NCBI RefSeq assembly: GCF_001194135.2
Contig: NC_069002.1
Coordinates: forward strand, 14,931,398-14,995,397
From: Octopus bimaculoides
Lineage: Eukaryota
DNA length: 64,000 nt
Direction: 5' to 3'
Within the stretch, counting starts at the first letter, position 1. Every line of letters begins with the position of its first letter. Under the pieces are notes generated by a model. That model was not told the DNA's origin. It ran no database searches and saw only the letters and a list, made by a program, of their open reading frames with translations. Positions 3,818 to 63,870 of this stretch are shown here, in pieces. The translations under genes and the position numbers were made by a program.

Positions 3818-3945
3818 ATCATTGTTACCAAATGAAGGATCATAATTTCCAAAGCCACTTTTTTGAATTGCCCGCTTCTTCCTTGAGCTTGATCCGTCAG
3901 TTTTGATGACAGCATTTTCAAGAATGTTCTTAGTTATGTCTCTCA
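3818..3945 (-). CDS. Exon C10, contains RKKR
   Basis: 128 nt, phase 1-0; LRDITKNILENAVIKTDGSSSRKKRAIQKSGFGNYDPSFGNND. Confidence 0.9.
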
Positions 3946-6900
3946 CTGCAACAACAGAAACACTTTGATTTAGGGACAAAATAAACGGAACCAGCCACAG
4001 CAGTAGATATAAACTATTAAAAATGAATGAAGGAGGGGTTTAATGAAGGAATGTCTATGTGGAATCCCTGTTGCATCTTACAATGAGTAATGAGATATCT
4101 GTCTTATAATAATTCTGGGTAATTATAACACAAAAATTACATTAAGTGTTTAACTCTTTAACATTCAGATTTCTCTGTCAAATGTGATGTTTATTTATTC
4201 ACATTGTTTTGGATTAAATATATCTCTCTTACTTGTTTCAGTCATTTGACTGTGGCCATGCTGGAGCACTGCCTTTAGTCGACCAAATCGACCCCAGGAC
4301 TTATTGTTTGTAAGCCTAGTACTTATTCTATCGGTCTCTTTTGCCAAACCGCTAAGTTATGGGGACATAAACACACTACCATTGGTTGTCAAGTGATGTT
4401 GGGGGGGGGGACAAACACAGACACACACACAAACACACACACACACACACACATGTATACATATATACGACGGGCTTCTTTCAGTTTCCGTGTACCAAAT
4501 CCACTCACAAGGCTTTGGTTGGCCCGAGGCTATAGTAGAAGACACTTGCCCAAGGTGCCACGCAGTGGGACTGAACCCGGAACCATGTGGTTCATAAGTA
4601 AGCTACTTACCACACAGCCACTCCTATGCCTATGGGTATGTACCTTCAATAATGACCTCAGGCTGAATAGTGTCTTGTAAGTGGAAGTGATAGACATGAG
4701 TTGTAAGATGCCTAAAGTGTGTGTGGGTGGGTGTGTATAATGAATCATGGGATGCTGCATTGTGGATGTCAACTATCTTGGCAGATAAACTTATTGAGTC
4801 AGTGGCAGATGTGGCTAGATGATGAGTAGAGGAACAGTCAACAAACTATCAATGGTCAAGATCAGCCACTTGAGTCAATGAATTCCAGCTATCATCTGTA
4901 GTTATGGTGTGTCCAGATGCAACATTCAGCTCTCAAAAGACTAATATGACTTATTGGTCAAGGCAAGTTAACTGACTGGAGATGGATGATGATGATTGTG
5001 TATGTANNNNNNNNNNGTGTATGTATATGTTTATATGTGGAGGCACAATGGCCTAGTGGTTAGGGCAGCAGACTCGCGGTTATAGGATTGCGGTTTCGAT
5101 TCCCAGACCAGGCGTTGTGAGTGTTTATTGAGCGAAAACACCTAAAGTTCCACGAGGCTCCGGCAGGGGATGGTGGCGAACCCTGCTGTACTCTTTCACC
5201 ACAACTTTCTTTCACTGTTACTTCCTGTTTCTGTTGTGCCTGTAATTCAAAGGGTCAGCCTTGTCACACTGTGTCATGCTGAATATCCCCGAGAACTCCG
5301 TTAAGGGTACACGTGTCTGTGGAGTGCTCAACCACTTGCACGTTAATTTCATGAGCAGGCTGTTCCATTGACGGATCAACTGGAACCCTCGACGTCGTAA
5401 GCGACGGACTGCCAACAAACATGTATGTGCATATGTATATGTTTGTATGTATGTGTGAGCATATATGTGTCTGTGTGTGTAGATATGTATGTTTATATGT
5501 GTGTATGTGTACATGAGTATTTGTGTGTTTCTGTATTCCCCGTGTCTGATGTTTACACTCTGCCTGAAAACAAGGTCTTTATCCCTAGAAAAGGAGCCTT
5601 GGATACAATCTGCCACAAGCACATGTCCAGTGAATGAACCTGTGTTTACATCGTCTGAAAAGCCAGAATAAACATTCCAGCGCTTGGAAACAGGTGAGGG
5701 ATACTGACAGGAAGTGGACTTTAAATTGATGATGATAATTATATTAACATAGCTAACACCATTGGGATACAAATATTATCATTAACGTCTGCTTTCCATG
5801 GGTTGGACAGTTTGACAGGAGCCAACTAGTTTGAAGACTGCCCCAGGCTACTGTGTCTGTTTTGGCATGTTTTTTACAGCTGGATGCCCTTCCTAATACC
5901 AACCACCTTGCAGATTGGACTGAATGCTTTTTATGAGGCACCAGCACTGGTGAAGTCAGTTTAAGCATGGTTTTTACAGCTGGATGCCCTTCCAAATGCT
6001 AACCACTCATCAGTGTGGACTGGATGCTTTTTACGTGGCTCTAGTACCAGCAGGGTCACCTAGTAACTTGCAAGACAAGGAATTTTGAGAGGAGGGAGGG
6101 CATTGAAGGAGGTGATCTTGTGTCAGATACTGAAAGGTTAGAGTGTTAGACATTATTTGATATGAATAGAATAAGATAATGAACAACATTATAATTATAA
6201 ACACAAAAATTATCAAACTGTTCTAAGTGAAGTTATTAACCCTTTAGCATTCAGAATTACACTGTCAAATGTAAAACTTATTTATTCATATTGTTTTGAA
6301 TTAATCATGTATTATCTTCTAGCTTTGAAATTTCAATGATATGACTGTTTATTTTTAGAATGACATTGTAGGGTAGGTGCAAGAGGCTGGATCAGGCAAG
6401 TTTAAATGATAGAAGGTTTAAGGTGTACTTACATTTTTTGCGTAGGGGGCAGCCGATTGCATCTCCAAATGGTTTACAGTCCACTGTTGCATCAACACAA
6501 GTACAATAAGTCGGAACATCAAAATCCAGTTTCTTGCTGTAGCCATTATAATAAGAATCACCTGTGACTCTGCAAAAACAAAGGTAAGCTTATCAACTTT
6601 ATCTCTACAACAACATAATAGGCCAGTTGCTTAGCATAGTAAGAGAGATATAAATGTGTAAATTGTTGTTGGCACTCTGTCGCTTACGACGTCGAGGGTT
6701 CCAGTTGATCCGATCAACGGAACAACCTGCTCGTGAAATTAACGTGCAAGTGGCAGAGCACTCCACAGACACGTGTACCCTTAACGTAGTTCTCGGGGAT
6801 ATTCAGCGTGACACAGTGTGACAAGGTTGGCCCTTTGAATTACAGGCACAACAGAAACAGGAAGTAAGAGTGAGAGAAAGTTGTGGTGAAAGAGTTCAGC

Positions 6901-9900
6901 AGGGTTCGCCCCATCCCCTGCCAGAGCCTCGTGGAGCTTTAGGTGTTTTCGTTCAATAAACACTCACAACGCCTGGTCTGGGAATCGACACCGCAATCCT
7001 ATGACCGTGAGTCCACTGCCCTAACCACTGGGCCATTGCACCTCCTAAATGTGTAAATATTACACAGCATACATACAGGGTGCAGTGGATAAACTGTCGT
7101 TTAAATTACGCAAAAATGAAAATAATACTGACATCTCATCTTCACAGATATATTTGCCAAAATTACATAAAAATATCTTGAAATACTAAAGAGTAAATTT
7201 ATTCAATAAAATCGCCATTGGCTTTAACCACGGCCTCCAGACGACTTCGGAATCTCCAGCAACTCTTCTGTGTGGTCTCCTTGTTTAAGTTGATGAATGC
7301 TGCCATAATCCTTGCCTTCAGTTCATCTTTGGTGTTACAAGAAGTTTTGTTGGTCTCTTGCTCAACTGTGCCCCACATATAGTAACCAAGGGTTTTGCAG
7401 TGTGGGGAGTTAGGTGGCCAGATGTTATGGGTAATGTGGTTGCAGAAATTGTCTGACAGCCATGACTGAGTTCTGGTTGTGTGGCATGATGCAGAGTCCT
7501 GTTGCCAGACACAGGGTGTTCCAGTAGCCACTCACTTGACACAAGGCAGCACTACCTCCTCCAGGCACTTGATGTAGGTCTCCGTGTTGAGTGTGAGGCT
7601 GTGTGGGAATGGAGGCATAACGTCACCATCACTAGTAATCACTCAAAACACCATGATGTTGTCTGGATCTTTGATTTTTATCACTCTGAGTACATGTTTT
7701 GGGGATACAACAAGTCAACGGTTCTGTGTGTTCACCATCTGATCCTGGCAGAAATTTTTCTTGTCTGAGAAAAACTAAAGCATGTTTGATTGGAGGGAAT
7801 GCTTGAGTTTGTTCAAAAGCTTTGTAGCACAGTCTTTCTTCTTGTCCTTGATGGCTTGGGATAAAAATTGGTCCTTTCTCATCTTGTATGAGGAATACTG
7901 AATGTCTTCATGCACTACCTGCCTGATAAGGAACACAAACACTCCCATGTCCCTGGCGATGGACCTGATTGACTTGGAGGGATTGTTTTCAATCATGGCC
8001 TGGATTTCACCAACAAATAATAATAATAACAATAATAATAATAATAAAACATTATTCAGACTAATATATAACAAAATCACCAGGACTAACAAGTATATAT
8101 AACATACGGAAAATAGCACTACTAACCACTGCACACATCCTATATAAAACACTTTCAATACAGTAAAAATAAGAGTATCACAACAAACCACAGCACATAA
8201 CCAAGGCACACAGAGCTGCGCTCAGTAGTACAGTGAAAGTATGTGATAAAAATAAGACTAATTATAACAGCCATGTGTTGAGAAGAATTCTTTGGGTTTG
8301 AATAAATAATTCACCTCTGGAAATATGGATGTTTTGTTCATCATCCTTAAACAAACTTCATTCAGGGATCTTTTGAGGAGGATGGGCTGCTCAACCTGAA
8401 AAAATTCTAACTGAGCCCCACCTGCGAGGTCATGTGCTGCTTATCTTGATATGCAATCACTATGTTGCATACATATGGCTGTGATGCATGTGCCTGGTGT
8501 ACCCTTATTAAGCAGGTAGTCATGATGGGTATATTGGGCTTCGTATATTTGTACCCCAGTGTCACTGTAATGGCATGCACTGCTCTCTCACTAGATAATA
8601 ATAGCAACAAAGAAGTAAGAATAATTTTTATATAAGATCTGAAAGCATATCATGTTCCCTGTGTTACTTTCAAAGTTCAGTTGTGTTCAGTCTGTCTGTA
8701 GTCATGCGTTAATCTTTTAAGTATCACAGGAGAAGATGCTGGCAGGAAGTGTTTGAGAAAATCTACAAAAACACACCATACAAATGTAACTACACACACA
8801 CACACACATTATTCTGTGTTTGTTTTGCACCATTTTCATGAAAAAGTTGAATCTATGAAGAACAGGACTTACCTCCATTCTTTACTAAAACCATTTGGAA
8901 GCTTTTTAATTGGGAACTGTTTGGTTTTACCAGTTAAATAATTGGGAGATTCCAATGTGTACTTGTCACAAAGACCTGCAGAGAAAATAAAGTTGCAGTT
9001 AGATTTTATTGAATTCTTTCTAAGTTAAGCCATCTGCTCCAGCAACAAGGACTCATACACACACACACACACACTGTCTTATGGATATGCACTCTCTCAA
9101 ACACACATAAACACACACATAGACTCTCTCCAATACACACACATACATTCACTCAGACACATATCAATACGCCTGTACAAACCCAAATCTTTCATCAAAA
9201 CATTTTTATCTCAACTACAACTTTTAAATGTTTATTTTTTGTAAGAAACCATTTACTTCTTCTCCAAGGAAATTCTCAATGATTAATCACGAAACTCATT
9301 TTACATAAACTTGAAAAATTGGTACAACATAGCTTACCTTTACTCTTCTCTAAATCTTTAGCTGTTGCATCAAGATAAAGGTTCATAAAAGCATGGAATC
9401 TTGGTTTAATTTTCACAATCATTCCAGTTGGTAGTACAACCTGTGAAGAAGAAATGGGATGCAAATTAGAAAAACTGCAACAAATTGTATATACTTAAAA
9501 TCTTTACTAACGAAGATGCTCAGACAATAGATTTAAAATGTCTAATTTTAAAGGGTGACTTGATGAGCCTTTAATAGTATATATGGCAACTATTCTTGCA
9601 ACGTTTAGAATCATCTGATGTAATCATCCCAAAGTTAAAGTAATGGAATCAAAATGTTCCTGGAGGTAAGCCTTTATATGTGTGTATGTGTACATATATA
9701 TATCTGGCCCATCAGGAATCACTGCTGAGATACTTAAAATATTTGGTGGTGTAGGCTATGCTCTAGTCACCTGTATAGTTAAGCAGGTGGTACACAAAAG
9801 AACCATACCCAAATTGCTTAGAGGTATCATAATAATAATAATAATAATAATAATATTAGTTTATATAAAAGACTGATAACTCAGCAGAAATGTAATAGAT

Positions 9901-10197: not shown

Positions 10198-11484
10198 CCT
10201 TTCTGCTATAAGTACAAGGCCTGAAATTTGGGGGTAGTGGAGTAATCAATTACATCGACCCCAGTACTCAACTGGTACTTATTTTATTGACCCTGAAAGG
10301 CAAAGTCAACCTTGGCAGAATTTTCAACTCAGAATTTAAAGATGAAGGAAATGCCACTGAGCATTTTGTCTTGCATGCTAATAATAATAATGATGATGGT
10401 AAACATATGAGTTTTGTATGTGATTAAATGAGCTAAGGCTGTAGGAAACTTACCACATAATAAGAACCAAAGACGTTTGTGTAAATTTTGGTTGCTGGTG
10501 TGAGGTCACCATGGAGGTATGTCTTGACTTTGACAGGTAATGTTCTGGCTTTAAATTTAGAATTAGCATACTGGCATTTGTTGAAAACGATGACATCATC
10601 TCCTGATCGAACTATGACTGCACAGGTACAAGAAGCACGGCCACATCTTGTAAAGAAAGCTCTGACCTAACAAGACAAAATATAAAAAGGTAATGTTAAC
10701 AGGTGACTGAGAAAGTCTGTTCAGTAGATATATGTATGTAATTATGCATGTGTATATATGTTTTTATGTGTGTAAATGTATGTGTGTGTGTGTGTATATA
10801 TATATACATATATATATATAATAATAATAATAATATTAGGGACAAAATCCAAAATTACAGGTAAAAACTCAATTAAAATCAATTTATAAAAAATTAAAAT
10901 TAAATTGAGCTTTTTGTATATAATATACATGTTATTATAATGGATGAAGGGAGGATTATTGATTGGTTATTATTTTGATATTTTGATATTTTTAATAATT
11001 TTTCTATCTTTATAAAATAAGTATTTCATATTAATTCATTTGGTACTTATTGTTGGTTGAGATATATATATCTAATTATTNNNNNNNNNNNNNNNNNNNN
11101 NNNNNNNNNNNNNNNNNNNNNNNNNNNNNNNNNNNNNNNNNNNNNNNNNNNNNNNNNNNNNNNNNNNNNNNNNNNNNNNNNNNNNNNNNNNNNNNNNNNN
11201 NNNNNNNNNNNNNNNNNNNNNNNNNNNNNNNNNNNNNNNNNNNNNNNNNNNNNNNNNNNNNNNNNNNNNNNNNNNNNNNNNNNNNNNNNNNNNNNNNNNN
11301 NNNNNNNNNNNNNNNNNNNNNNNNNNNNNNNNNNNNNNNNNNNNNNNNNNNNNNNNNNNNNNNNNNNNNNNNNNNNNNNNNNNNNNNNNNNNNNNNNNNN
11401 NNNNNNNNNNNNNNNNNNNNNNNNNNNNNNNNNNNNNNNNNNNNNNNNNNNNNNNNNNNNNNNNNNNNNNNNNNNNNNNNNNNN

Positions 11485-24946: not shown

Positions 24947-24980
<34 letters not shown>

Positions 24981-26848: not shown

Positions 26849-26914
<66 letters not shown>

Positions 26915-31639: not shown

Positions 31640-31676
<37 letters not shown>

Positions 31677-31986: not shown

Positions 31987-32079
<93 letters not shown>

Positions 32080-32625: not shown

Positions 32626-32661
<36 letters not shown>

Positions 32662-33058: not shown

Positions 33059-33095
<37 letters not shown>

Positions 33096-52222: not shown

Positions 52223-52261
<39 letters not shown>

Positions 52262-56919: not shown

Positions 56920-56920
56920 G

Positions 56921-56958: not shown

Positions 56959-57711
56959 TTGACCCAGGAATTGTCAAGAAGGAAGGCAAAACAAACATGT
57001 AGATTCCTATTAAATATGAGATGGCTCAACTGTGGAAATTGAAGAAAGTGAGGACTCAATACCTAGAACCTAGATCACAAGTACTTCAACAAAGCTGCTT
57101 GAAACCAGTGTGGAGATTTATACTAACCATAGAACCTATGTAGAGCAAAATAGATACTAGCATTGAAAGCTGTGGAATGTATATTAAGTAGTCCTGGTTT
57201 TACTGTGCATAGCAAACAATTGAGATTGTCAAGGATGGAAATCATTTAATCAGAGGCTTAACTCAATTAGAGGCATTAATCAACAAAAAAGACATCATCA
57301 TACAATAAGCTAATTGCTAAAAAAATTAAGTAACACACTCACGCACAAAAGATGATGCGGAAAGCTACTTACATGTAAATCTGTTGTACAAGATTCTATG
57401 TAATTCTCTATAGAGATAGATGGTAATTTCTGAATGACTTTAGCAACCTCAGTGATCATAATAAATTCTTGACAGTAGGTCTTGGCTTGTTCTAAGGTGA
57501 TGTTGCTGGAAATATCCTGACACGAAAAAAAAAAAAAAAAGAAAAACCATGAGGAGAGATTGTAAATGCATAGACTTAATTTAGTTTTTGGAAGAAAAAA
57601 TATTTTTTTAGAAATAGGATAATTTCAAAAAATAATGGACAAAAAATATAATTATTAAGTTACACTTGTGTATCAGTTTGGGGCAAAACCAGTTAGAGTT
57701 GTTGTAGTTAT

Positions 57712-57747: not shown

Positions 57748-59877
57748 AGTGGATGCAGCTTCTTTTATGTTCAATCCTTTGTCTTTTTAAAAAGTTATCC
57801 TTCANNNNNNNNNNNNNNNNNNNNNNNNNNNNNNNNNNNNNNNNNNNNNNNNNNNNNNNNNNNNNNNNNNNNNNNNNNNNNNNNNNNNNNNNNNNNNNNN
57901 NNNNNNNNNNTATTATCATTGCAAAATAATTATTAATTAAGACGAAATAAAAGGAATTACAAAAAAAAAAAAATGATAAAATCTTATTCTTTTACTGTTT
58001 CATTTGTGCATTCAATAGCAGTGTGGGGTGGGAGAGATGGTTTTTCTATTTTCTACTACTTTGAACATTTCGACTGGGAAATCAGTAAGAGAAGAACACA
58101 TCAATCCCAAAAATCTGTATATTATATTGAGGACTTACCACAGAAACGTATGTCTCGTTGTATTCAAAAGTTGTTTGTGGTTGGAGTTTCTCACATTTCT
58201 TGGGTTCTTTGGCATGTTTAATCAAAGTTGATGTTATGTCTTTGACACCTGAAATTTCAAAATGGAAGAAGGAAAATAATCTTTCGTAGTTTTATATAAT
58301 GATATGACAGAGCTTTAAACTTGATCCTATTTTGTTTTGGCAACTTTCAGTGGATGAAAAGCCAAGTCAAATGTGAATTGATTTGAATTCAAAACAAAGT
58401 GTTGCAACTAAATACCACCAGGTATTTAGTTGATCCCTGTTTGATTCTACCAATTCATCTCCACTATAAAGTCCCATCATAAAACAGAAATATTGTTACG
58501 TTAAAATATTAGTATTTAAACACTGATAAAACAATTAATCTATCTTCCATGACTGCCCCATCATTTCTTGTCTCCGATGACTATGTGGACATTTCTTCAT
58601 TAAAATGACAAAGAACACCCCTAAAAAGATGACTTTACAGATAACTATACCAAATTATATATTTGTTTTGCAAGATTCTTGATGTGGATTTATCATGTGA
58701 ATTTATGTGTTGAAACAGATATTGTATTGAGGGATGGTCATGTTACCAGTTTAGCCAATGAAAACACATGCACTATATATTTGGTGTTCACTTCAGCTTT
58801 ATTTTATATTAATTGTATTTCAACCAGAGCACTTTCATCACACTTCTGTGGCCTCATCAGTGGTCCTTTGCTTTCTTTCGTTTTTGTGCCTCTCCTTACT
58901 AACGGTCTGCCATTTTGTATCGCTGTTGTAGGTGTCTTTATTTGTGCATGCATATATCCCTGTGTGTGTCTATGTTTAGTAAGTGTGTGTGTGTGGGGGG
59001 GGGGGAATGGCTATGGCACCTGCATTATCACTATACCAAATTACTTTATCAGCAAAATTGTGATGTGAAAGTTGGTAATTTTCATTTACCTTTAGATTTT
59101 CGTTTTGAAAAATCTCCACAGTTAACAACATCCATATTTGTGCCACACACTGATTCCTGATTGTCAACACAATGACAGTAAACTTCCTGTGACATAGTTT
59201 CATTAGCTTCTGGGCAATATCCATTATACAAAGTGTTTTCCTTTTTAACTCTATAATAAGAAATAATAAATTATATTTCCTTTCACAATACAAATAATTA
59301 CACAAGAATTGCAATTGATAGTTAATTAAGATAATATTGATCACTGAAGGTAGTTGTCTATAAACAGATAACTTTTTCAATGTTCCTGTATTTAATGTAA
59401 ATATAATGATTTCTAATGTTGCTTTGCTGTGTTTTTTTCTTTAAGTCTTTGTTGTTTATCTTTTTATTGTCTTATTTTTTATTTATTTATTGGTAACCAC
59501 TATAGCATAGGGTCTATTTTTGAGAACCTATTTTTCTAGCTTGCTTCATATTCTGTTTATCTTGCCTTCATGTGGTTGTTACGTATTCTGTCTGGGGTCT
59601 GGGTACTTTTTTGTGTTGATTAAATTATTTTGATGAAATAGTTTCTCCTTTTATGGTTTAGCAGTTGTAAGTTATGGTTCAGGGGTGTCATATCCTGTTA
59701 TCCTAGAAATGTTATTCTTAGTATTTATTAAATCACACATGTACACACACACACACACGCTCGCACGCACGTGTAACTTGTTTGCTTTTACAAATATAAA
59801 GGAAAACAGTTCTTGCCTAAAGATTGCAGTAGTGTGAAACTTGAAGTACAAGGAAAACAAACTCATTCTCTCTCTCT

Positions 59878-60138: not shown

Positions 60139-62718
60139 GAGAGACAGATAATTCACCTCCAACTCAAAGAGAATGGTTTCGGTCGTTTAGACTTGGTGGC
60201 GTAAACGGTTCCATTTGGGAAGCGAAGATCATTTTTCTTGTTGTCATCATAAACTCCACATAAACCTGACAGCAAACAACGAAACATTTATGAAAATGTT
60301 AACAAAATATTCTTTTCAGAAATGTAAACAAGTTTTTATGTATTAAAGCATCTGAGATCAGAAGATGCTTTCGTTAAATTAATCTTTTTTCATTGTGTTT
60401 TTTACCAAATAATATTTTACTTATATGTGTGTGTGTGTGTGTGTGTTTGCGTGCATATGTGCATGGTTGCTTGTGTGCATGCGTGTGTGATGTATGTGCG
60501 TTTTAACCTTTTTGTTATTATATTGTATTATCATATTATATTATATGTTATTATATATATTTGTTATTATATTATTGTTATTATATTGGAAGCCCTGCTG
60601 AAATGCACAGGCTTCGTTTCAATTTTGAAAATAAACAAAGAATTTAGTAAAATAACTTTGTCATTATTAAACTTATGTTTGAAGCATAAATTAACATGAA
60701 ATTTCATGGTAAGTTTTAGTTTAGTTCATTTTAAAACAAGAAATGTGCATCACAGAACCAGGGGCACTCTTAAATGGGTTTGTATCAAAAGGGTTAAACA
60801 AAATTTCTCTGTAGACTGGAAAAAATATAATGAACAGCTTTGATTGATTTTCGAACCATATTTAAGTTCTCACCAGAGATGTTTACATCAGTTGACTAAT
60901 CCCAGAGATATAAGGAGTCAATTCATTTATATACATGACACATTCAGTTGTTTCTGAGGAATGAAATTACGTGGTCTGATCAATAAGTATCCAGACTGTT
61001 GCCATAGTAACGAAGCTAAAGCATGCATTATAAAGTTGCTTGGCAGAAATTGACCTTGAACTTTGCTGTGCATGTGCACTAAGTTTTAATGTTCTAGCTG
61101 ACTTCCACTGTTTGCAGCAGTGCTTGGAAGGAAGGTGTGTAGTGTGTGATCATCGCATTGACCATGACAAGAGAAATTTGAGCAGAGAATCTGCATCAAA
61201 TTTTGCCAAAAGCTTGGTGTTACCTGCTCTGAGGTCTACGCAAAGTTTCAAAAAAGTTTTCATCATTCTCGACATAATTGTTTTGGTCCGCTGGAAGCAA
61301 TTTTGATACAAAATTGACAGACACGTGTCTCATACCCAAATTTTCAGTGATAATGGACTGAACTGAACGGTAACTAATTTGCATATCCTATGATAACTCA
61401 TGGATAGTGATTTGATGATTTCTCCTCACAGCTGTGCACACATCTGCAATGTTTTTAACAGTTCTGCTAGTTGCAGGTCTCCCAGAACGTTTGTCATATA
61501 TATACACATAACTGGCCCTTGTACTGATGGCATGTAAAAAGTACCCACTACACTTTCGGAGTGTTTGCCATTAGGAAGGTCATCCACCTGTAGAAACTTT
61601 GCCAGATCAGATTTGAACCTGGTGTAGCCTTCTGGCTTGCCAGCCCTCAGTCAAACCGTCCAACCCATGCCAGCATGGAAAGCGGACGTTAAATGACGAC
61701 GATGATGATGACATACATATATATATATATATATACACACACATATATACACATACATATATTTATACACACACATGTACATATATATATTTACATACAC
61801 ACACACACACATATATATATATATGCACACACATATACACATACACACACCCATATGCACGCACAGACACACACACACATATGTATGTATGTATGTGTGT
61901 ATTCTATTACAAAAAATACTTATGTGAATTAAGTGTCTGAGGAGTAAAAAGTGAATGAGATTTATTCAATGTCAAGTCTGGTTCTATCCTTACCTTCTGT
62001 ATGTTTGAAATCAGTTGCACTAGCTTTGTAAATTACATTCACAAATTCATTGTGAGAAGTAACAGTAACAACTCCTCCTGTTGGCAAATACACCTGAATA
62101 AATAAAAATAAACGTAGCTTATAAGTGAGCATGCATAACATATTGGACTATGGTGTGTTAGTGTACAGATTGCGACTGACAAACTGACATAACTCATGTT
62201 TATTACAAATACATTTATGGTGAGCAATAGTAGAATTGGTCACAGGCTTCCAGCCAGCCACTTGTGGTTTTGCTGATTTCCAGTGGTGTTAGTGACAAGC
62301 AAAGTGCCTATAACTTGATTTGGAACAAATAATTGATAACAGTTCATTTGTAAAGTGACAGTGTTATTGTTGAGGGTTACGTCCTTCACAAGGGGTACAT
62401 TCAGTCACAGACACAGCTGTAGGCATGAATGAGTGATTAAAAAGGTTGTTTTGCAGTAATGCAGCTTGGGATTTGATTTTATTGCACGATACCTTGGGTA
62501 AGTGCTTTCTATTTTGGCTCCAGGTTGATCGATACATTGGTTGTAAATTTTAGCAGACAGAAACTGTACAGAAACTCATTTCGTGTGTGTGTGTGTGTGT
62601 GTGATGTTACACCTGTACAGGTAATGGTGATCTGATGGAGGGAGTGAGCTTATATGTACACAAACTTGTTTGGTAAGAAATTGTTGAACCTTCATATGTC
62701 ATCTAGCGATGGAAGAGT

Positions 62719-62758: not shown

Positions 62759-63870
62759 AGTACATAGCACCCAGTATACTCTGTAAAGTAGTTGGCACTA
62801 GAAGGGCATCCAGCTAAAGAAATTATGCCAAAGCTGACAGTAACAAATTGTCCAACCCATGCCAGTATGGAAAATGGACGTTAAATTATGATGATGAATT
62901 GATGTGTGTGTGAGTATATGTGTATATATATGTGTGTATGTACGTTTGTATGTGTACTGGTTTCTGTGTTTGATACATCTTTAGTGGTATATTTCAAACA
63001 GTTATAATCTAACCCTCTGTGTATTATCAAAAAAAAGATCAAGAGTCTTGCTCAAGCTATAGGATCATAAGTGAACTTCAAAATCAAACAATCAGTATCT
63101 CTTTTGTTTTTTTCAATCTCACCTAAAAAAATTCAAACAAACGAAACATTAAAGATAAAGCAACTCACTGAATATTTCTTCCCACCCTGCTGGCTGATGA
63201 CTCTTGTTCCTGGTGTAAGTTTTCCATTGAGGAAAAGTTGAAGGGAAATCTGTTTCTTGGATGATGCTTTACTCTTTGATTTTGCCCCACATCTATCTAT
63301 CAAGATCACATCATCTCCACTTAGTACAGCAACGGCACAGTTACAAGATGCCACTCCATGGCATGAACGGTAGAATGTATGGACCTGAATTGTAAAAGAC
63401 AAAATATTTTATTACGTTCTGATCATTTTAAGATCATACACTGTCTATGTTTTACAATTGATATTGAATATAATCAGTAGTATGGGAGGATTTAGTAAAA
63501 TAAACAACTTATTGCAATGGTGTTTTGTGGTGTTTTGAACAGAATATAAATAAAAAGGCAATTAAATAAATACAATAAATGCCATTAATTTAAGCACGGA
63601 CATTTTAAAATGAGTAATGCTGTATCCCAGAACCAGAGGCAATGTCAGGTAGGGTGGAAGAAAAAGAGTTAGAAGACAAGTGAATTACTCCACTGAACAG
63701 GATAAAAGGGAATGAAATACACTTATTGCTTATAATAAAGATCATGCATACTCACTTAATCTACCAGAATTTTAACATATAACAACAACTATTATTTATA
63801 TCTTACCGCAAATGGTTGGGTTGTGTGACGGAAGAGGACGAATTCTCCTTCAAAGAAATTGTTGTAATAG
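3818..63870 (-). CDS. Multi-exon gene (40 exons in window, 5' and 3' ends unresolved) encoding a giant, probably extracellular protein with 3 tandem VWD-EGF-IPT-LamG modules; VWDE-like
   Basis: 40 exons with canonical AG/GT ends; phases chain perfectly; 6955 nt, about 2318 aa, no stop seen; VWD motifs ([GN]DPH, GEFV, SCNCAVAV.SGDD, GLCG) recur three times with matching exon sizes (64,64,64; 109,109,103). Confidence 0.93.
4224..4633 (-). mobile_element. tRNA-head SINE family B
   Basis: Head GGCG[CT]AGGAGTGGCTGTGTGGTAAG, GGTTCAGTCCC box, CCTTGGGCAAGTGTCTT core, central (AT/GT)n tract; shared with 45525 and 50526. Confidence 0.87.
5038..5420 (+). mobile_element. tRNA-head SINE family A, full length
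   Basis: A/B box-like head, conserved body, (CAA)n tail. Confidence 0.88.
6236..6421. mobile_element. TTAA-flanked MITE (piggyBac-like ends)
   Basis: TTAACCCTTTAGCATT ... AATGATAGAAGGTTTAA; related pieces at 4150-4215, 43830-44102, 44517-44620. Confidence 0.55.
6433..6569 (-). CDS. Exon C9
   Basis: 137 nt, phase 2-1; RVTGDSYYNGYSKKLDFDVPTYCTCVDATVDCKPFGDAIGCPLRKK. Confidence 0.92.
6664..7045 (-). mobile_element. tRNA-head SINE family A, full length, 13-bp TSD
   Basis: Flanked by TAAATGTGTAAAT at 6651-6663 and 7046-7058. Confidence 0.9.
7076..8015 (-). mobile_element. Tc1/mariner transposase remnant (DD37D/maT-like), 5'-truncated
   Basis: FSDEK, WQQDSA, WPPNSP motifs with stops and frameshifts; right end TA|CAGGGTG. 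Confidence 0.88.
8046..8594 (+). mobile_element. 3' end of an RLE-type non-LTR retrotransposon (R4/Dong-like)
   Basis: IRKIALLTTAHILYKTLSIQ* resembles the C-terminal QK..LLGTA.ILRK motif; 3' UTR then (AAT)n tail. Confidence 0.65.
8873..8975 (-). CDS. Exon C8, VWD C-terminus
   Basis: 103 nt, phase 1-2; GLCDKYTLESPNYLTGKTKQFPIKKLPNGFSKEWR. Confidence 0.9.
9338..9440 (-). CDS. Exon C7, VWD
   Basis: 103 nt, phase 0-1; VVLPTGMIVKIKPRFHAFMNLYLDATAKDLEKSK. Confidence 0.92.
10454..10666 (-). CDS. Exon C6, VWD
   Basis: 213 nt, phase 0-0; VRAFFTRCGRASCTCAVIVRSGDDVIVFNKC...GDLTPATKIY...SYYV. Confidence 0.94.
12124..12187 (-). CDS. Exon C5, VWD
   Basis: 64 nt, phase 2-0; YYSSYMTGEFIVYQHDTLPFE. Confidence 0.92.
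12481..12569 (-). CDS. Exon C4, VWD start (GDPH)
   Basis: 89 nt, phase 0-2; VSITNKDSKKFIKGICKITGDPHVKSFNQK. Confidence 0.93.
12837..13050 (-). mobile_element. SINE family D
   Basis: Reverse complement near-identical to 54786 copy; diverged copies at 10196-10378, 51627-51845, 56695-56830. Confidence 0.8.
14858..15244 (-). CDS. Exon C3, pre-VWD beta domain
   Basis: 387 nt, phase 0-0; IDNTTDIKLIEGE...EPNYIC...ITLQALVDSVY...SVTKK; homologous to B3. Confidence 0.92.
16391..16608. mobile_element. TTAA-flanked MITE (piggyBac-like ends), opposite orientation to 6236 copy
   Basis: TTAACCCTTT.AGCATT ... AATGATAAAGGATTAA terminal inverted repeats. Confidence 0.6.
17810..17896 (-). CDS. Exon C2
   Basis: 87 nt, phase 0-0; VSCAIKAKSSIRCGEPISQRSNVIISETK; homologous to B2. 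Confidence 0.88.
18480..18833 (+). mobile_element. Degenerate RLE endonuclease domain of a non-LTR retrotransposon
   Basis: WNLEIK...YDQPEIVV*DHEENICYVVEINCPLDT...EK...LG...LIHKLQ...KTFF resembles the RPD.V...C..IE..CP.D motif. Confidence 0.6.
20688..20929 (-). CDS. Exon C1, module start
   Basis: 242 nt, phase 1-0; GNLTKPGAPSVSY...ITYTCIF...YKGIW...AFKNG; homologous to B1. Confidence 0.9.
21422..21706. repeat. Palindromic MITE-like element with head-to-head telomere-like repeats
   Basis: Imperfect terminal inverted repeats (GATTGGCCTTTTCTGTAAAAAG / CTTTTTACGGAAAAGGCCAATA); GGTTAG-type then CTAACC-type repeats at 21537-21615. Confidence 0.65.
22369..22509 (-). CDS. Exon B18, Thr/Pro/Glu-rich mucin-like linker
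   Basis: 141 nt, phase 1-1; DNETVTVMPTEPTTIETELPTEPTDVTGPSLTTQVTQTELTTTKACQ. Confidence 0.82.
23660..24157. repeat. Old about 270-bp-period tandem duplication in a purine-rich tract
   Basis: 23660-23881 versus 23929-24157 share GTAACTGAGAAAGTC and GGATGGAAGTAAGCATTAA.AAGATGGTTTTAGGATATCA. Confidence 0.8.
24248..24659 (-). CDS. Exon B17, LamG-like C-terminal part
   Basis: 412 nt, phase 0-1; ISVSF...IFTNGG...LTLSTKTQQWTV...ITFSWSVYTGLKLFLDG...ALRAT. Confidence 0.94.
25169..25216 (-). ncRNA. Candidate minimal type-I hammerhead ribozyme motif (sense to host pre-mRNA)
   Basis: GTCT-CTGATGA-AG-GGATATT-CCT-AATATCC-AA-GAAA-CAGCTG-TA-AGAC; palindromic stem III ACAGCTGT, triplet GUA. Confidence 0.65.
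25282..25448 (-). repeat. Exact 167-bp intronic copy of part of exon B17 (24489-24655)
   Basis: Identical by eye; lacks the first 4 exon nt and the acceptor. Confidence 0.92.
25630..25844 (-). CDS. Exon B16, LamG-like N-terminal part
   Basis: 215 nt, phase 1-0; SEKIETKDC...LEGKDQFIAADALQTTCLSNPEGCRLG. Confidence 0.92.
26130..26490 (+). mobile_element. tRNA-head SINE family A, 17-bp TSD
   Basis: Flanked by ATATGTGTAATTTAAAG at 26113-26129 and 26491-26507. Confidence 0.92.
26720..26831 (-). CDS. Exon B15, small Cys-rich domain
   Basis: 112 nt, phase 0-1; ADICIIDDKCYGDGYLVMTTSFICNIRQNRSAWSLVE. Confidence 0.92.
27405..27860 (-). mobile_element. Repeat family C with internally repeated CAGCTGGATGCCCTTCC motif
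   Basis: Three copies of the core motif; similar diverged copies at 5775-6110, 22975-23190, 35362-35650, 48000-48250, 55021-55240. Confidence 0.7.
28024..28218 (-). CDS. Exon B14, IPT/TIG-like end
   Basis: 195 nt, phase 0-0; ...ATYVTSDQVVCPIDSLGKYKISISNDG...YNPVCYKCDDQNCTQR. Confidence 0.94.
28890..29946 (-). mobile_element. SINE family B interrupted by an assembly gap and a nested family C copy (29630-29778)
   Basis: 3' half at 28890-29072, 5' half at 29779-29946. Confidence 0.8.
30142..30329 (-). CDS. Exon B13, EGF end and IPT/TIG-like start
   Basis: 188 nt, phase 1-0; GECQCQNKYFGVDCSIQKDTPP...ISGENFVQTNTLICHYNFSN. Confidence 0.94.
30519..30775 (+). mobile_element. tRNA-head SINE family E
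   Basis: GAAGGCGCATGGCTC head, GTTCAATTCC box, TGTTCTTG[AG]GCAA..ACACTT core; related copies at 33140-33360, 39810-40055, 53130-53380. Confidence 0.65.
31073..31241 (-). CDS. Exon B12, start of EGF-like domain
   Basis: 169 nt, phase 0-1; ITEDTSWAKEAVQSIQQSC...MICPNDCSGFGECVK. Confidence 0.93.
32332..32459. repeat. Palindrome, 56-bp arms (52/56)
   Basis: 32332-32387 versus 32404-32459. Confidence 0.9.
32658..32943. repeat. Long palindrome, 120-bp arms (117/120 identical), 46-bp spacer
   Basis: 32658-32777 versus reverse complement of 32824-32943, compared by eye. Confidence 0.92.
32806..32896 (+). ncRNA. Degenerate type-I hammerhead motif inside a palindrome
   Basis: TATTCC-CTGAAGA-[GTGTAAGGC/GCTTTATAC]-GATA (GAAA mutated)-TGT-TG-ACA-TA-GGAATA; the inverted copy retains GAAA. 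Confidence 0.5.
33590..33751 (-). CDS. Exon B11, helical Cys region
   Basis: 162 nt, phase 0-0; EFTWPSPTKKITETEATTICKTTIEGKNSTKNCLKILPNTEFAMSLDSCIEDIQ. Confidence 0.93.
33985..34242 (+). mobile_element. Repeat family C with (GAT)n tail (RTE-like 3' end, inferred)
   Basis: GGTTGGCGTTAGGAAGGGCATCCAGCTGTAGAAAC...GGACGTTAAACGATGATGAT; also at 13925, 29630, 61515 and others. Confidence 0.8.
34256..34470 (+). mobile_element. SINE family A, 5' half
   Basis: Matches head and first half of the 5038 copy. Confidence 0.8.
34642..34748 (-). CDS. Exon B10
   Basis: 107 nt, phase 1-0; VKDITKKLLKKAKIPKKCISRQEEETFEYNSTYVTP. Confidence 0.92.
35030..35202 (-). CDS. Exon B9
   Basis: 173 nt, phase 2-1; RVKKKDTLYTGYCPLK...HVYCNCMSLSETECSSNMDYQTCG...HRK. 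Confidence 0.93.
36450..36695. repeat. Degenerate minisatellite rich in CCAATAGGG
   Basis: About 8 CCAAT/ATTGG motifs in about 13-nt units. Confidence 0.7.
37047..37155 (-). CDS. Exon B8, VWD C-terminus
   Basis: 109 nt, phase 1-2; GLCGSFDSNKNNDFVMSNGKVLIERGKRPDEFSLSWR. Confidence 0.94.
37811..37922 (-). CDS. Exon B7, VWD
   Basis: 112 nt, phase 0-1; IILPTGTSVIVAKGRKRTSQFINIWVQPSPADMKKTE. Confidence 0.93.
38657..38713 (-). ncRNA. Candidate minimal type-I hammerhead motif (sense to host pre-mRNA)
   Basis: ATA-CTGATGA-[T CG..CTAGA-TATTAT-TCTAG..CG T]-GAAA-TCG-TT-CGA-TA-TAT; intact core, only 3-bp stem I. Confidence 0.5.
38714..39065 (-). mobile_element. SINE family A, 3'-truncated
   Basis: Matches family A consensus; lacks tail. 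Confidence 0.85.
39147..39353 (-). CDS. Exon B6, VWD
   Basis: 207 nt, phase 0-0; VHAFYRNCNGHASCNCAVAVRSGDDVILIDQC...GGLKYK. Confidence 0.95.
40625..40688 (-). CDS. Exon B5, VWD
   Basis: 64 nt, phase 2-0; FYNCFFEGEFVLYQHQTLPFA. Confidence 0.93.
40845..41285 (+). mobile_element. SINE family B-related, diverged
   Basis: GGTTCAGTGCCACTGCATGGCACCTTGGGCA core and family B tail. Confidence 0.65.
41505..41581 (-). CDS. Exon B4, VWD start (NDPH)
   Basis: 77 nt, phase 0-2; VDVVDSNKKAVCKSINDPHITTYDGR. Confidence 0.93.
41795..41990. repeat. (GATA)n microsatellite region
   Basis: Direct reading. Confidence 0.9.
42617..43012 (-). CDS. Exon B3, pre-VWD beta domain
   Basis: 396 nt, phase 0-0; ILSSKIKVVEGMKAG...PPRLMC...IPVIATIDGLRD...KIGRVQ. 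Confidence 0.93.
43047..43111 (+). mobile_element. SINE family A, 3' fragment
   Basis: GCTGTTCCGTTGATCGGATCGACTGGAACCCTCGACGTCGTAAGCGA...CCAACAACAA. Confidence 0.75.
43232..43324 (-). CDS. Exon B2
   Basis: 93 nt, phase 0-0; LTCAVSACYSSNCENSQGPKRHSLALVAEIK. Confidence 0.9.
44634..44948 (+). mobile_element. SINE family A, 5'-truncated
   Basis: Matches family A body and tail. Confidence 0.85.
45148..45383 (-). CDS. Exon B1, module start (beta-rich domain)
   Basis: 236 nt, phase 1-0; EHPTFKDAPELKW...FLCSFPPHPNDKQLKYLVFWY...YKDG. Confidence 0.9.
45525..45915 (+). mobile_element. SINE family B, full length
   Basis: Near-identical to 4224 and 50526 copies. Confidence 0.88.
45919..47880. repeat. 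About 440-bp direct repeats flanking exon A12
   Basis: 45919-46359 versus 47444-47880; about 7 substitutions and one 4-nt indel. Confidence 0.92.
46656..47291 (-). CDS. Exon A12, LamG/concanavalin-like domain (single exon)
   Basis: 636 nt, phase 1-1; CFRGQENECNGGFTVNF, IFSNGG, LTVSTAERQWVV, ITFSWSQHNGLVLMIN. Confidence 0.93.
48983..49325 (+). mobile_element. SINE family B, diverged
   Basis: Head, CCTTGGGCAAG core and CAGCATGGCCG..GTC.AATGACT tail recognisable. Confidence 0.75.
49621..49776. repeat. Palindrome, 58-bp arms (50/58)
   Basis: 49621-49678 versus 49719-49776. Confidence 0.88.
49985..50099 (-). CDS. Exon A11, small Cys-rich domain
   Basis: 115 nt, phase 0-1; TDICKINNECYENLAINPKNATLTCNVLVSKNSWQLID. 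Confidence 0.92.
50526..50892 (+). mobile_element. SINE family B, full length
   Basis: Near-identical to 45525 copy with a small internal deletion. Confidence 0.88.
51292..51501 (-). CDS. Exon A10, IPT/TIG-like end
   Basis: 210 nt, phase 0-0; ...SSEEQIECQIPSAKVFEVSVSNDNSTWSNSFVVVTFNSLCEKCTETKCSPR. Confidence 0.93.
52261..52493. repeat. Inverted repeat, 59-bp arms (56/59)
   Basis: 52261-52319 versus 52435-52493. Confidence 0.9.
52357..52448 (+). ncRNA. Candidate type-I hammerhead ribozyme motif, best-formed in window
   Basis: Stem I TATTTCC/GGAAATA (7 bp), CTGAGGA, stem II GAAGATTACA/TGTAATCTTC (10 bp), GAAA, palindromic stem III ACATATGT, triplet GUU. Confidence 0.75.
53731..53915 (-). CDS. 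Exon A9, EGF end and IPT/TIG-like start
   Basis: 185 nt, phase 1-0; GICQCSEEFDGADCSLKKTEPP...ITGTGFTDSETLMCRLQEMT. Confidence 0.93.
53989..54485. repeat. Higher-order tandem repeat: 217-bp units built from 27-bp subunits plus hammerhead-like motif
   Basis: AAATTGACAGCTACTTGAGAAATAACT about 10 times; long unit repeated at 217-bp spacing. Confidence 0.85.
54786..55020 (+). mobile_element. tRNA-head SINE family D (central motif resembles the MetaSINE domain as I recall it)
   Basis: GGCGGTGAGCGGGCAGAAACGTTAG head; GACTTTGCCTTTCATCCTTTCGGGGTCGATAAATTAAGTACC core. Confidence 0.8.
56454..56637 (-). CDS. Exon A8, start of EGF-like domain
   Basis: 184 nt, phase 0-1; LTGDLVW...GLCLNDCNKQGKCLE; donor GTTGGT is weak. 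Confidence 0.9.
56830..56958. repeat. (AAT)n microsatellite
   Basis: Direct reading. Confidence 0.97.
57373..57516 (-). CDS. Exon A7, helical Cys region
   Basis: 144 nt, phase 0-0; DISSNITLEQAKTYCQEFIMITEVAKVIQKLPSISIENYIESCTTDLH. Confidence 0.88.
58139..58248 (-). CDS. Exon A6
   Basis: 110 nt, phase 1-0; GVKDITSTLIKHAKEPKKCEKLQPQTTFEYNETYVSV. Confidence 0.9.
59090..59250 (-). CDS. Exon A5, Cys-containing linker
   Basis: 161 nt, phase 2-1; RVKKENTLYNGYCPEANETMSQEVYCHCVDNQESVCGTNMDVVNCGDFSKRKSK. Confidence 0.92.
59881..59948. repeat. (AT)n microsatellite; many others, including at most gap edges
   Basis: Direct reading. Confidence 0.97.
60157..60265 (-). CDS. Exon A4, VWD C-terminus
   Basis: 109 nt, phase 1-2; GLCGVYDDNKKNDLRFPNGTVYATKSKRPKPFSLSWR. 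Confidence 0.94.
60968..61497. mobile_element. mariner remnant with internal inversion
   Basis: TA|CGTGGTCTGATCAATAAG end, EQRICIKFCQKLG on +; DKRSGRP...TIHELS...ISYRSVQSIITENLGMRHV on -. Confidence 0.8.
61515..61712 (+). mobile_element. Repeat family C
   Basis: Same core and (GAT)n tail as 33985. Confidence 0.78.
61994..62093 (-). CDS. Exon A3, VWD domain
   Basis: 100 nt, phase 0-1; VYLPTGGVVTVTSHNEFVNVIYKASATDFKHTE. Confidence 0.92.
63169..63384 (-). CDS. Exon A2, VWD domain
   Basis: 216 nt, phase 0-0; VHTFYRSCHGVASCNCAVAVLSGDDVILIDRC...GGKKYS. Confidence 0.95.
63807..63870 (-). CDS. Exon A1, VWD domain
   Basis: 64 nt, phase 2-0, AG/GT; YYNNFFEGEFVLFRHTTQPFA. Confidence 0.92.

What the first reader, a model, noticed from the sequence alone, without database searches (positions are those of the whole stretch)
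3818..63870. Giant tandem-module VWD-EGF-IPT-LamG protein gene (3 or more modules of about 1050 aa)
Seen: 40 phase-compatible exons fall into three homologous series (A partial, B complete at 3168 nt or 1056 aa, C partial) with conserved exon sizes and phases, and module junctions at phase-1 introns. A and B VWD exons are visibly more similar to each other than to C. Established: vertebrate VWDE has one VWD plus EGF repeats, and class 1-1 modules are typical of exon shuffling. Inference: whole-module intragenic duplication produced a lineage-specific mucin- or matrix-like mega-protein with added LamG lectin-like domains. I do not know this architecture as a characterised family.
Basis: partly seen in the sequence, partly recalled or inferred. 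Interest (0 to 1): 0.75.

Follow-up and report, generated by a model that had tools for sequence, protein, structure and literature searches.

The report
Multi-module VWDE-like extracellular protein gene
The window holds about 60 kb of one very large minus-strand animal gene, probably molluscan, that repeats a roughly 1,000-residue VWD/EGF/IPT/lectin-like unit at least three times. The same uncharacterised architecture is already predicted in cephalopods, snails, bivalves, a ribbon worm and a brachiopod, so it is real but not lineage-specific.

Summary
They splice into 6,814 nt (2,271 codons) with no stop. They form three homologous series with the same exon order, near-identical sizes and identical intron phases.

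All six assembly gaps inside the finding lie in introns. Exon order across each gap follows the paralogous module.

Two numbers were not reproduced. I get 39 exons, not 40. Module B is 3,027 nt (1,009 aa), not 3,168 nt.

Each unit reads: LamG/ConA-like jelly roll (a single phase 1-1 exon), Ig_VWDE, a second Ig-like sandwich, VWD, a Cys-rich "Vwde" region, EGF, IPT/TIG.

One multi-module gene is well supported. "Lineage-specific" and "mucin-like" are not.
- Colinear multi-module predicted proteins exist in Argonauta, Bulinus, Pecten, Crassostrea, Tubulanus and Lingula.
- The Tubulanus model looks complete: signal peptide, two modules joined by LamG, transmembrane helix.
- The window protein has no Pro/Thr/Ser-rich tract.

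No family member has been studied functionally. Modest interest.

The parts
63807..63870 (-). Exon I-1 (64 nt, phase 2-0): VWD, second exon (YYNNFFEGEFVLFRH...). The preceding VWD exon lies beyond the window end.
63169..63384 (-). Exon I-2 (216 nt, 0-0): VWD core, 4 Cys
61994..62093 (-). Exon I-3 (100 nt, 0-1): VWD
60157..60265 (-). Exon I-4 (109 nt, 1-2): VWD end (GLCG...SWR)
59090..59250 (-). Exon I-5 (161 nt, 2-1): post-VWD Cys-rich segment
58139..58248 (-). Exon I-6 (110 nt, 1-0)
57373..57516 (-). Exon I-7 (144 nt, 0-0): 'Vwde' region. Gap 57805-57910 lies in the intron before it.
56454..56637 (-). Exon I-8 (184 nt, 0-1): 'Vwde' region and first half of EGF
53731..53915 (-). Exon I-9 (185 nt, 1-0): second half of EGF and start of IPT/TIG
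51292..51501 (-). Exon I-10 (210 nt, 0-0): IPT/TIG and CxxC
49985..50099 (-). Exon I-11 (115 nt, 0-1): small Cys-rich segment. In single-module relatives the membrane anchor follows here.
46656..47291 (-). Exon I-12 (636 nt, 1-1): whole LamG/ConA-like jelly-roll domain in one symmetric exon
45148..45383 (-). Exon I-13 (236 nt, 1-0): Ig_VWDE-like domain, first part; start of module B
43232..43324 (-). Exon I-14 (93 nt, 0-0): Ig_VWDE-like domain, end
42617..43012 (-). Exon I-15 (396 nt, 0-0): second Ig-like beta-sandwich with no close structural relative
41505..41581 (-). Exon I-16 (77 nt, 0-2): start of VWD no. 2 (CKSINDPHITTYDG)
40625..40688 (-). Exon II-1 (64 nt, 2-0): VWD
39147..39353 (-). 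Exon II-2 (207 nt, 0-0): VWD core
37811..37922 (-). Exon II-3 (112 nt, 0-1): VWD
37047..37155 (-). Exon II-4 (109 nt, 1-2): VWD end
35030..35202 (-). Exon II-5 (173 nt, 2-1): post-VWD Cys-rich segment
34642..34748 (-). Exon II-6 (107 nt, 1-0)
33590..33751 (-). Exon II-7 (162 nt, 0-0): 'Vwde' region
31073..31241 (-). Exon II-8 (169 nt, 0-1): 'Vwde' region and EGF start
30142..30329 (-). Exon II-9 (188 nt, 1-0): EGF end and IPT/TIG start. Gap 29073-29618 lies in the following intron.
28024..28218 (-). Exon II-10 (195 nt, 0-0): IPT/TIG
26720..26831 (-). Exon II-11 (112 nt, 0-1): Cys-rich segment
25630..25844 (-). Exon II-12a (215 nt, 1-0): first third of the LamG-like domain
24248..24659 (-). Exon II-12b (412 nt, 0-1): rest of the LamG-like domain; end of module B
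20688..20929 (-). Exon II-13 (242 nt, 1-0): Ig_VWDE-like; start of module C. Gap 19493-19641 lies in the following intron.
17810..17896 (-). Exon II-14 (87 nt, 0-0): Ig_VWDE-like end. Weakest call: tblastn E = 0.32 in a 5.4-kb search space, but exact AG/GTAAGT and the expected phase.
14858..15244 (-). Exon II-15 (387 nt, 0-0): second Ig-like sandwich. Gap 14004-14603 lies in the following intron.
12481..12569 (-). Exon II-16 (89 nt, 0-2): start of VWD no. 3 (CKITGDPHVKSFNQ)
12124..12187 (-). Exon III-1 (64 nt, 2-0): VWD. Gap 11081-11484 lies in the following intron.
10454..10666 (-). Exon III-2 (213 nt, 0-0): VWD core
9338..9440 (-). Exon III-3 (103 nt, 0-1): VWD
8873..8975 (-). Exon III-4 (103 nt, 1-2): VWD end
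6433..6569 (-). Exon III-5 (137 nt, 2-1): post-VWD Cys-rich segment. Gap 5007-5016 lies in the following intron.
3818..3945 (-). Exon III-6 (128 nt, 1-0): last exon found. It ends at a GTAAGT donor, so the gene continues, but no further exon was detected in 1-3817.

Best explanation
Positions 63870 to 3818 (minus strand) are an internal stretch of a single, very large protein-coding gene of an animal. The animal is most likely a mollusc and possibly a cephalopod; that is inferred only from which homologues score best.

The gene encodes a multi-module, cysteine-rich, N-glycosylated extracellular protein of the VWDE-like family. Each module of about 1,000 residues reads:
- a LamG/ConA-like jelly roll, encoded by one phase 1-1 exon;
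- an Ig_VWDE domain;
- a second Ig-like sandwich;
- a VWD domain with the conserved (N/G)DPH start;
- a Cys-rich 'Vwde' region;
- one EGF;
- an IPT/TIG domain;
- a short Cys-rich segment.

The module without LamG (2,400 nt) is bounded by phase-1 introns, and so is the LamG exon. Whole units can therefore be duplicated, and 'head' domains swapped, without breaking the frame. That is how the array arose. It arose anciently: multi-module versions occur across Lophotrochozoa.

Inferred from the apparently complete nemertean model and from single-module relatives: the full protein has one N-terminal signal peptide and one C-terminal transmembrane helix, both outside this window. It would be a cell-surface or pericellular adhesion or recognition protein. 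The lectin-like head of each module would bind ligand, and the tandem modules would give multivalency and reach.

The gene structure and family membership are shown. The topology and the binding role are inference.
For: - Frame and splice sites: a 39-exon, 2,271-codon stop-free chain with canonical splice sites, far above background.
- Module structure: three series with identical phases and near-identical exon sizes.
- Domains.
- Family: module I finds bivalve and annelid proteins at E = 1.7e-110.
- Colinearity: the chain aligns to Argonauta hians GAB1607640.1 over 2,115 residues, 34% identity, 1,251 bits, with indels of 8 aa or less. This crosses both LamG-to-Ig junctions in one frame.
- Wider family: an exhaustive HMMER search with the oyster homologue gave 1,935 hits. 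The top hits are 2,257-3,858-aa proteins with 4-10 matched stretches.
- A complete relative: Tubulanus XP_074642559.1 reads signal peptide, EGF, LamG, module, LamG, module, transmembrane helix, tail. Laminin_G_3 passes threshold there.
- Same exon series elsewhere: the oyster locus and an ENA contig carry the same exons in the same order on one strand, with LamG as a single exon.
- No sign of separate genes: signal-peptide-like first-exon candidates in the two junction introns are no more frequent than in other introns and are not conserved.
- Link to VWDE: true VWDE proteins of Lingula, amphioxus and hagfish are hit at about 1e-45 to 1e-36.
Against: - There is no transcript evidence for this species.
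- All multi-module relatives are computational gene models. Several (Argonauta, oyster) are visibly truncated or cut at arbitrary places.
- The start and end of the gene are outside the window, so the signal peptide, the anchor and the total module number are unknown.
- Single-module relatives with their own signal peptide and anchor exist (Ostrea, Owenia), so tandem separate genes are conceivable.
- Module III is very divergent.
- The LamG exon of module II is interrupted by a 970-nt insert whose removal by splicing is assumed.
- No experimental function is known for any member.
Confidence: 0.78

Rival explanations
1. A head-to-tail array of separate genes, each encoding one module of about 1,000 aa with its own start and end. 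The continuous frame would be a leftover of the duplication history.
For: Single-module relatives with their own signal peptide, head domain (C-type lectin or MAM) and membrane anchor exist (P0003 Ostrea, P0006 Owenia). Annotators split the oyster array into genes of 1,104, 1,036 and 1,694 aa. Reading through the LamG donor at 46656 meets a stop after two codons.
Against: - The oyster 'genes' are cut in the middle of modules, not at module borders.
- No anchor exon after exon 11 and no conserved signal-peptide exon before exon 13 was found.
- The junction introns (1,272 and 3,318 nt) are ordinary in size.
- The phases match exactly.
- A RefSeq model with one signal peptide and one anchor spans two modules.
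- Proteins of Argonauta, Bulinus and Pecten span two to four or more.
Confidence: 0.12
2. A partly decayed array. Module I would be functional, while module II (LamG exon broken by an insert) and/or module III (very divergent) would be non-functional relics, skipped or truncating.
For: The LamG exon of module II is interrupted by 970 nt containing stops, an exact copy of part of the exon and a SINE-like piece. Module III is only 32-35% identical to I and II and has lost two cysteines.
Against: - All 39 exons keep open frames, canonical splice sites and the correct phases.
- The insert is flanked by G|GTAAGT and a 25-nt pyrimidine tract plus CAG. Its removal restores the LamG alignment residue for residue.
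- The two cysteines lost in module III occupy different exons (5 and 6) and disappear together. That is what would be expected for a disulphide pair under continued structural constraint; this is my inference.
Confidence: 0.08
3. An assembly artefact: a falsely duplicated or mis-scaffolded region that imitates tandem modules.
For: There are eight N gaps in the window and two near-exact local direct repeats.
Against: The modules differ by 45-80% at the protein level, exon by exon, so they are not collapsed or duplicated haplotypes. Exon order across every gap follows the series. The same tandem order is seen in two independent assemblies of other species.
Confidence: 0.02

Closest known systems
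Predicted multi-module proteins of other Lophotrochozoa: Argonauta hians GAB1607640.1 / GAB1607641.1 (3,038 / 3,759 aa), Bulinus truncatus KAH9523928.1 (3,858 aa), Tubulanus polymorphus XP_074642559.1 (2,257 aa), Crassostrea virginica LOC111132750 array. All are 'hypothetical' or 'uncharacterized'.
   Same: Same domain order, with LamG in the same inter-module slot. The window chain aligns colinearly over two modules to the Argonauta protein. The oyster locus has the same exon series and a single-exon LamG.
   Different: Only 26-34% identity over the long colinear alignments and up to 52% in the VWD region. No orthologue from the window's own species was found in the protein collection. Module number varies. 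Some Bulinus junctions lack LamG. Pecten maximus XP_033756293.1 carries PAN domains in the slot instead.
[quoted passage not shown]
   Same: Same VWD subtype. The Ig_VWDE and 'Vwde' Pfam families are named after it. The oyster homologue hits Lingula, amphioxus and hagfish VWDE at about 1e-45 to 1e-36. Both are predicted secreted or extracellular. [quoted passage not shown]
   Different: VWDE has one VWD followed by a run of EGF repeats. The window protein has one EGF per module, then IPT/TIG and LamG, and the whole unit is repeated.
Single-module type I membrane relatives: Ostrea edulis LOC130050218 and an Owenia fusiformis unnamed protein
   Same: Ig, VWD, Vwde, EGF, TIG in the same order, 28-33% identity over about 65% of the query.
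   Different: One module only. The head domain is C-type lectin x2 or MAM instead of LamG. Each has its own signal peptide and membrane anchor.
FCGBP, zonadhesin and gel-forming mucins (tandem VWD-C8-TIL modules)
   Same: Very large extracellular proteins built by tandem duplication of a VWD-containing module. A fish 'IgGFc-binding protein-like' appears among the distant hits.
   Different: No C8, TIL or PTS regions here. The module content is different.

Membership tests
VWDE-like proteins (Pfam Ig_VWDE, VWD, Vwde) | VWD domain above Pfam's gathering score | tested here: met
   Module B: PF00094, 55.8 bits against 22.9, E = 8.8e-15, full-length match to profile positions 1-156. Modules I and II also matched.
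VWDE-like proteins (Pfam Ig_VWDE, VWD, Vwde) | Ig_VWDE domain N-terminal to the VWD | tested here: inconclusive
   PF25776 scores 21.5 bits against a cut-off of 28.1 in module B and 19.8 bits for exon I-13 alone. The homologous position in Pecten P0013 passes at 33.4 bits.
VWDE-like proteins (Pfam Ig_VWDE, VWD, Vwde) | 'Vwde' region (PF26129) after the VWD | not testable with these tools
   The local Pfam copy returned no PF26129 hit even for proteins that carry it in the precomputed tables. Indirect support: exon I-8 is 56% identical to an ORF on locus L002 annotated PF26129.
VWDE-like proteins (Pfam Ig_VWDE, VWD, Vwde) | C-terminal run of many EGF repeats, as in canonical VWDE | tested here: not met
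   There is one EGF per module, with sub-threshold EGF_2 and EGF_Teneurin hits at one place.
Lophotrochozoan multi-module VWDE-like proteins (Argonauta/Tubulanus type) | Colinear similarity across two or more consecutive modules, including the junction | tested here: met
   Chain residues 2-2115 align to P0011 residues 917-3038, 1,251 bits, indels of 8 aa or less.
Lophotrochozoan multi-module VWDE-like proteins (Argonauta/Tubulanus type) | LamG-like domain between the TIG-side Cys-rich segment and the next Ig, encoded by a phase 1-1 exon | tested here: met
   Exons I-12 and II-12a+b. The same single exon occurs in the oyster L001 and in L002.
Lophotrochozoan multi-module VWDE-like proteins (Argonauta/Tubulanus type) | One N-terminal signal peptide and one C-terminal transmembrane helix | not testable with these tools
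   Both gene ends lie outside the window. There is no TM-like stretch in the 2,271 residues and no further exon in 1-3817 or 63871-64000.
Laminin G / ConA-like lectin-glucanase superfamily | Jelly-roll beta-sandwich fold and profile match | tested here: met
   AlphaFold2 mean pLDDT 87.5, pTM 0.87. Foldseek against PDB gave 278 matches at E <= 0.001; the top ones are the lectin-like HcN jelly roll of clostridial neurotoxins, TM 0.57-0.69. Laminin_G_3 is sub-threshold in the window (21.7-21.9 against 27.6). It was hit in 5 of 16 aligned family members and is above threshold in the Tubulanus homologue (37.4). This is membership at superfamily level only.
IPT/TIG domain | Pfam TIG above the gathering score | tested here: met
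   Module I scores 24.4 bits against 20.9. Module II is sub-threshold at 13.3 bits.
Gel-forming mucins / FCGBP-type proteins | VWD followed by C8 and TIL; PTS-rich tracts | tested here: not met
   No C8 or TIL hits. S+T+P is 20.7% and the richest 50-aa window has 19 of 50.

The most novel reading that the evidence does not exclude
The family would be a lophotrochozoan-wide class of multivalent surface receptors. A conserved Ig-Ig-VWD-EGF-TIG 'stalk' module would carry an exchangeable ligand-binding head (LamG, PAN, C-type lectin or MAM) plugged into a phase-1 intron slot. Module number and head type would vary between lineages to tune recognition of glycans, microbes or cells of the same species. 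In addition, the 970-nt interruption of the LamG exon in module II would be a recent, precise intron gain created by an insertion flanked by a (G/A)TAAGT duplication.
Probability: 0.15. Interest if true: 0.55.

Novelty: new member of a known kind. Interest (0 to 1): 0.3.

Why it matters
The window gives a clean, hand-checked exon model for a gene family that automatic annotation handles badly. The oyster array is cut into arbitrary 'genes', and the Argonauta models start and end inside domains.

It also shows a clear case of exon-phase logic. The duplicated unit and the inserted LamG domain are both bounded by phase-1 introns. Related species place PAN domains, or nothing at all, in the same slot.

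The family is widespread in molluscs, annelids, nemerteans and brachiopods, and it is related to VWDE, a gene needed for limb regeneration in axolotl. No member has a known molecular function. A correct architecture is the starting point for expression and binding studies.

It is not a new kind of system. Giant extracellular proteins built from repeated VWD-containing modules are well known.

Tried and rejected
I used the oyster homologue P0001 instead.
The alignment to Argonauta shows no missing block larger than 8 aa.
- A neighbour-joining tree of 27 VWD regions, meant to date the duplications, came out almost unresolved (bootstrap support mostly below 50%). Only some cross-species groupings of gastropod modules are supported, at 88-92%. 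The first attempt timed out.
- A search for exons downstream of 3818 and upstream of 63870, using about 200 family proteins, found nothing credible.
- The scan for signal-peptide-like first exons in the junction introns gave only background-level, non-conserved candidates.
- Rfam found no RNA family in the window.
- A Pfam scan of transposase-like ORFs at 7202-8221 was negative.
- A PDB sequence search with the LamG profile gave only weak pentraxin hits, E about 0.05.
- The exon-15 domain has no significant structural neighbour; the best is the Ig-like domain of pilus chaperones at E = 7e-3.
- The mucin reading is rejected on composition. The assembly-duplication reading is rejected on divergence.

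Full report
**What is in the sequence**

The window is AT-rich (35.9% G+C) and contains eight N gaps. A comparison of all stop-free six-frame segments against each other gave two kinds of result:
- interspersed repeat families, which I set aside;
- a set of low-copy minus-strand segments that match each other at offsets of about 23-24 kb and 28-29 kb.

Those segments carry recognisable VWD, EGF, IPT and LamG-like sequence. So the gene lies on the minus strand and runs from high to low coordinates.

**Gene model**

I located exons in three ways:
- tblastn with database homologues;
- listing AG and GT sites around every conserved segment;
- reading the unclear junctions directly.

The result is a chain of 39 exons.
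- Every exon is flanked by AG and GT.
- It totals 6,814 nt and 2,271 codons, with no stop.
- 27 of 39 donors are GTRAG, against 3.1% of all GT in the window.
- The pyrimidine fraction upstream of acceptors is 0.75, against 0.49 background.
- Introns are 219-3,318 nt, median 1,192.

The exons form three series with the same order and phases and near-identical sizes. I number the exon types 1-16 starting at the second VWD exon.
- Series I has types 1-16.
- Series II has types 1-16, with type 12 split in two.
- Series III has types 1-6.

**Assembly gaps**

All six gaps inside the finding fall in introns. The exons either side of each gap are consecutive members of the series. Compared with the paralogous module and with the best database relative, no exon is missing and no indel exceeds 8 residues. 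No coding inference depends on reading through a gap. Only the six intron lengths are uncertain.

I find 39 exons, not 40. Module B, bounded by phase-1 introns (45383..24248), is 3,027 nt (1,009 aa), not 3,168 nt (1,056 aa). The VWD-first units are 3,036 and 3,030 nt. I could not find the extra 141 nt.

Identity in the VWD region is 55% for I-II, against 32% and 35% for I-III and II-III.

**Domains**

- VWD passes Pfam's gathering score clearly (55.8 bits against 22.9).
- TIG passes in module I (24.4 against 20.9) but not in module II.
- EGF families and Ig_VWDE give consistent sub-threshold hits at the expected places.
- The LamG call was tested further.
 - The single exon I-12 (211 aa) was folded with a 16-sequence family alignment, giving mean pLDDT 87.5 and pTM 0.87. 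It is an all-beta sandwich.
 - Foldseek against the PDB gave 278 matches at E <= 0.001. The top ones are the lectin-like jelly-roll sub-domain of clostridial neurotoxin binding fragments, a ConA-like fold (TM 0.57-0.69).
 - Laminin_G_3 is hit by 5 of 16 family members and passes threshold in the Tubulanus homologue (37.4 bits).
 - So 'LamG' is right at superfamily level.
- Exon type 15 folds confidently (pLDDT 85.9) as a further Ig-like sandwich without a significant structural neighbour.
- The protein has 90 Cys and 26 N-glycosylation sequons. It has no Pro/Thr/Ser-rich tract and no hydrophobic anchor within the window. 'Mucin-like' is therefore not supported.

**Relatives**

Module I finds bivalve and annelid proteins of about 1,000-1,170 aa (best E = 1.7e-110). 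Two of them are single-module type I membrane proteins, with C-type lectin or MAM heads (Ostrea, Owenia). Two others already cross a module junction.

An exhaustive HMMER search with the oyster protein gave 1,935 hits. The best are long proteins with 4-10 matched stretches:
- Argonauta hians, 3,038 and 3,759 aa;
- Bulinus truncatus, 3,858 aa;
- Pecten maximus, 2,584 aa;
- Tubulanus polymorphus, 2,257 aa;
- Lingula anatina 'mucin-17', 2,771 aa;
- Haliotis, Biomphalaria and Bradybaena proteins.

Genuine VWDE proteins of Lingula, amphioxus and hagfish follow at about 1e-45 to 1e-36.

My chain aligns colinearly with the Argonauta protein over 2,115 residues (34% identity, 1,251 bits).

The Tubulanus RefSeq model looks complete. 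It reads signal peptide, EGF, LamG, module, LamG, a Thr-rich linker, module, transmembrane helix and cytoplasmic tail.

Pecten has PAN domains where the window has LamG. Some Bulinus junctions have nothing there.

At the DNA level the oyster locus carries the same exon series in tandem on one strand, with LamG as a single exon. The annotated 'genes' there are cut in mid-module. An unrelated ENA contig shows the same order, with 55% identity in LamG.

**One gene or several?**

Several observations favour a single gene:
- The phases match at both LamG-to-Ig junctions.
- The junction introns are ordinary in size.
- No membrane-anchor exon follows exon 11.
- Signal-peptide-like first exons in the junction introns occur at the background rate and are not conserved.
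- Database models, including one with a single signal peptide and a single anchor, span several modules.

I put the single-gene reading at about 0.8 and tandem separate genes at about 0.1. Only transcript data can settle it.

**How it arose and how it probably works**

The LamG exon is a symmetric 1-1 exon. The rest of the module (2,400 nt) is also bounded by phase-1 introns. Both whole-module duplication and insertion or exchange of a head domain therefore keep the frame. That fits the LamG, PAN or empty variation seen at this slot in other species.

The duplications are old. Window modules I and II (55%) are barely closer to each other than module I is to an Argonauta module (52%). Gastropod modules group across species rather than within a protein. 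The tree is otherwise unresolved.

By analogy with the complete relatives, I infer a large cell-surface or pericellular glycoprotein whose repeated lectin-like heads give multivalent binding. No experiment on any member exists in the papers searched. Vertebrate vwde is needed for axolotl limb regeneration but is biochemically unstudied (PMC7390686). In molluscs, 'Vwde' genes appear only in expression lists.

**Verdict**

This is a real gene. It was correctly recognised as a tandem-module gene, and I have annotated it exon by exon. It belongs to a widespread but uncharacterised VWDE-like family and is not lineage-specific, so the interest is modest.

Noticed in passing
window 24660-25629 (minus strand), with copies at 25279-25448 and 24486-24655: The LamG exon is uninterrupted in module I, in the oyster and in contig L002, but in module II it is split by a 970-nt intron. 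The intron is flanked by GGT|GTAAGT on the 5' side. On the 3' side a long pyrimidine tract and CAG are followed by ATAAGT in the exon, so (G/A)TAAGT is repeated at both ends, like a target-site duplication. Splicing it out restores the LamG alignment with only a Val-to-Ile change. Inside the intron lie a 167-170-bp copy of the following exon (99.4-100% identical) and a SINE-like segment. This could be a recent intron gain by insertion or an assembly artefact.
   Followed up: partly
window 45904-46359 and 47428-47880: A 458-bp direct repeat (96.5% identity, offset 1,524) flanks the LamG exon of module I on both sides. Its origin is unknown: two copies of one transposable element, or a local duplication.
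   Followed up: no
window 7202-8221, minus strand (intron between exons III-4 and III-5): Three adjacent ORF pieces end in '...WPPNSPHCKTLGYYMWG...'. From memory they look like a decayed Tc1/mariner-type transposase. The Pfam scan found nothing at E <= 0.01, so this is unconfirmed.
   Followed up: partly
window 1-359, 5063-5301, 6654-7053, 26084-26534, 38690-39210, 44562-45041; a second family at 4279-4677, 24763-25045, 29734-29957, 40851-41087, 45440-45757, 50564-50950, 51980-52290: Two interspersed repeat families, with at least six and seven copies, occur in both orientations and all within introns. One pair (1-192 and 44633-44824) is 95.8% identical. They produce many spurious ORF-to-ORF matches and must be masked before looking for paralogous exons.
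   Followed up: no
exons III-5 (6433-6569) and III-6 (3818-3945), compared with I-5/I-6 and II-5/II-6: Module III lacks two cysteines that modules I and II both have: the first Cys of exon 5 (GYC) and the single Cys of exon 6 (KKC). Losing both together suggests they form one disulphide. In place of the exon-6 cysteine, module III has SSSRKKRAIQ, which fits a furin-type R-X-K/R-R site.
   Followed up: no
exons I-16 (41505-41581) and II-16 (12481-12569): Each VWD starts with a conserved C-x-S/T-x-(N/G)-D-P-H-x-(T/K)-(T/S)-(F/Y) motif (NDPH, GDPH), which nearly all family members share. In mucins, BMPER and RGM proteins, the GDPH version of this motif is an acid-triggered self-cleavage site; I state that from general knowledge and did not test it here.
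   Followed up: no
locus L001 (Crassostrea virginica assembly GCA_053477285.1, CM130318.1: 7228603-7273293): The oyster array of the same exon series is annotated as three 'genes' of 1,104, 1,036 and 1,694 aa. Their borders fall inside modules, for example after exon type 6 and inside exon type 15. The public gene models for this family are probably fragments of a larger gene.
   Followed up: partly
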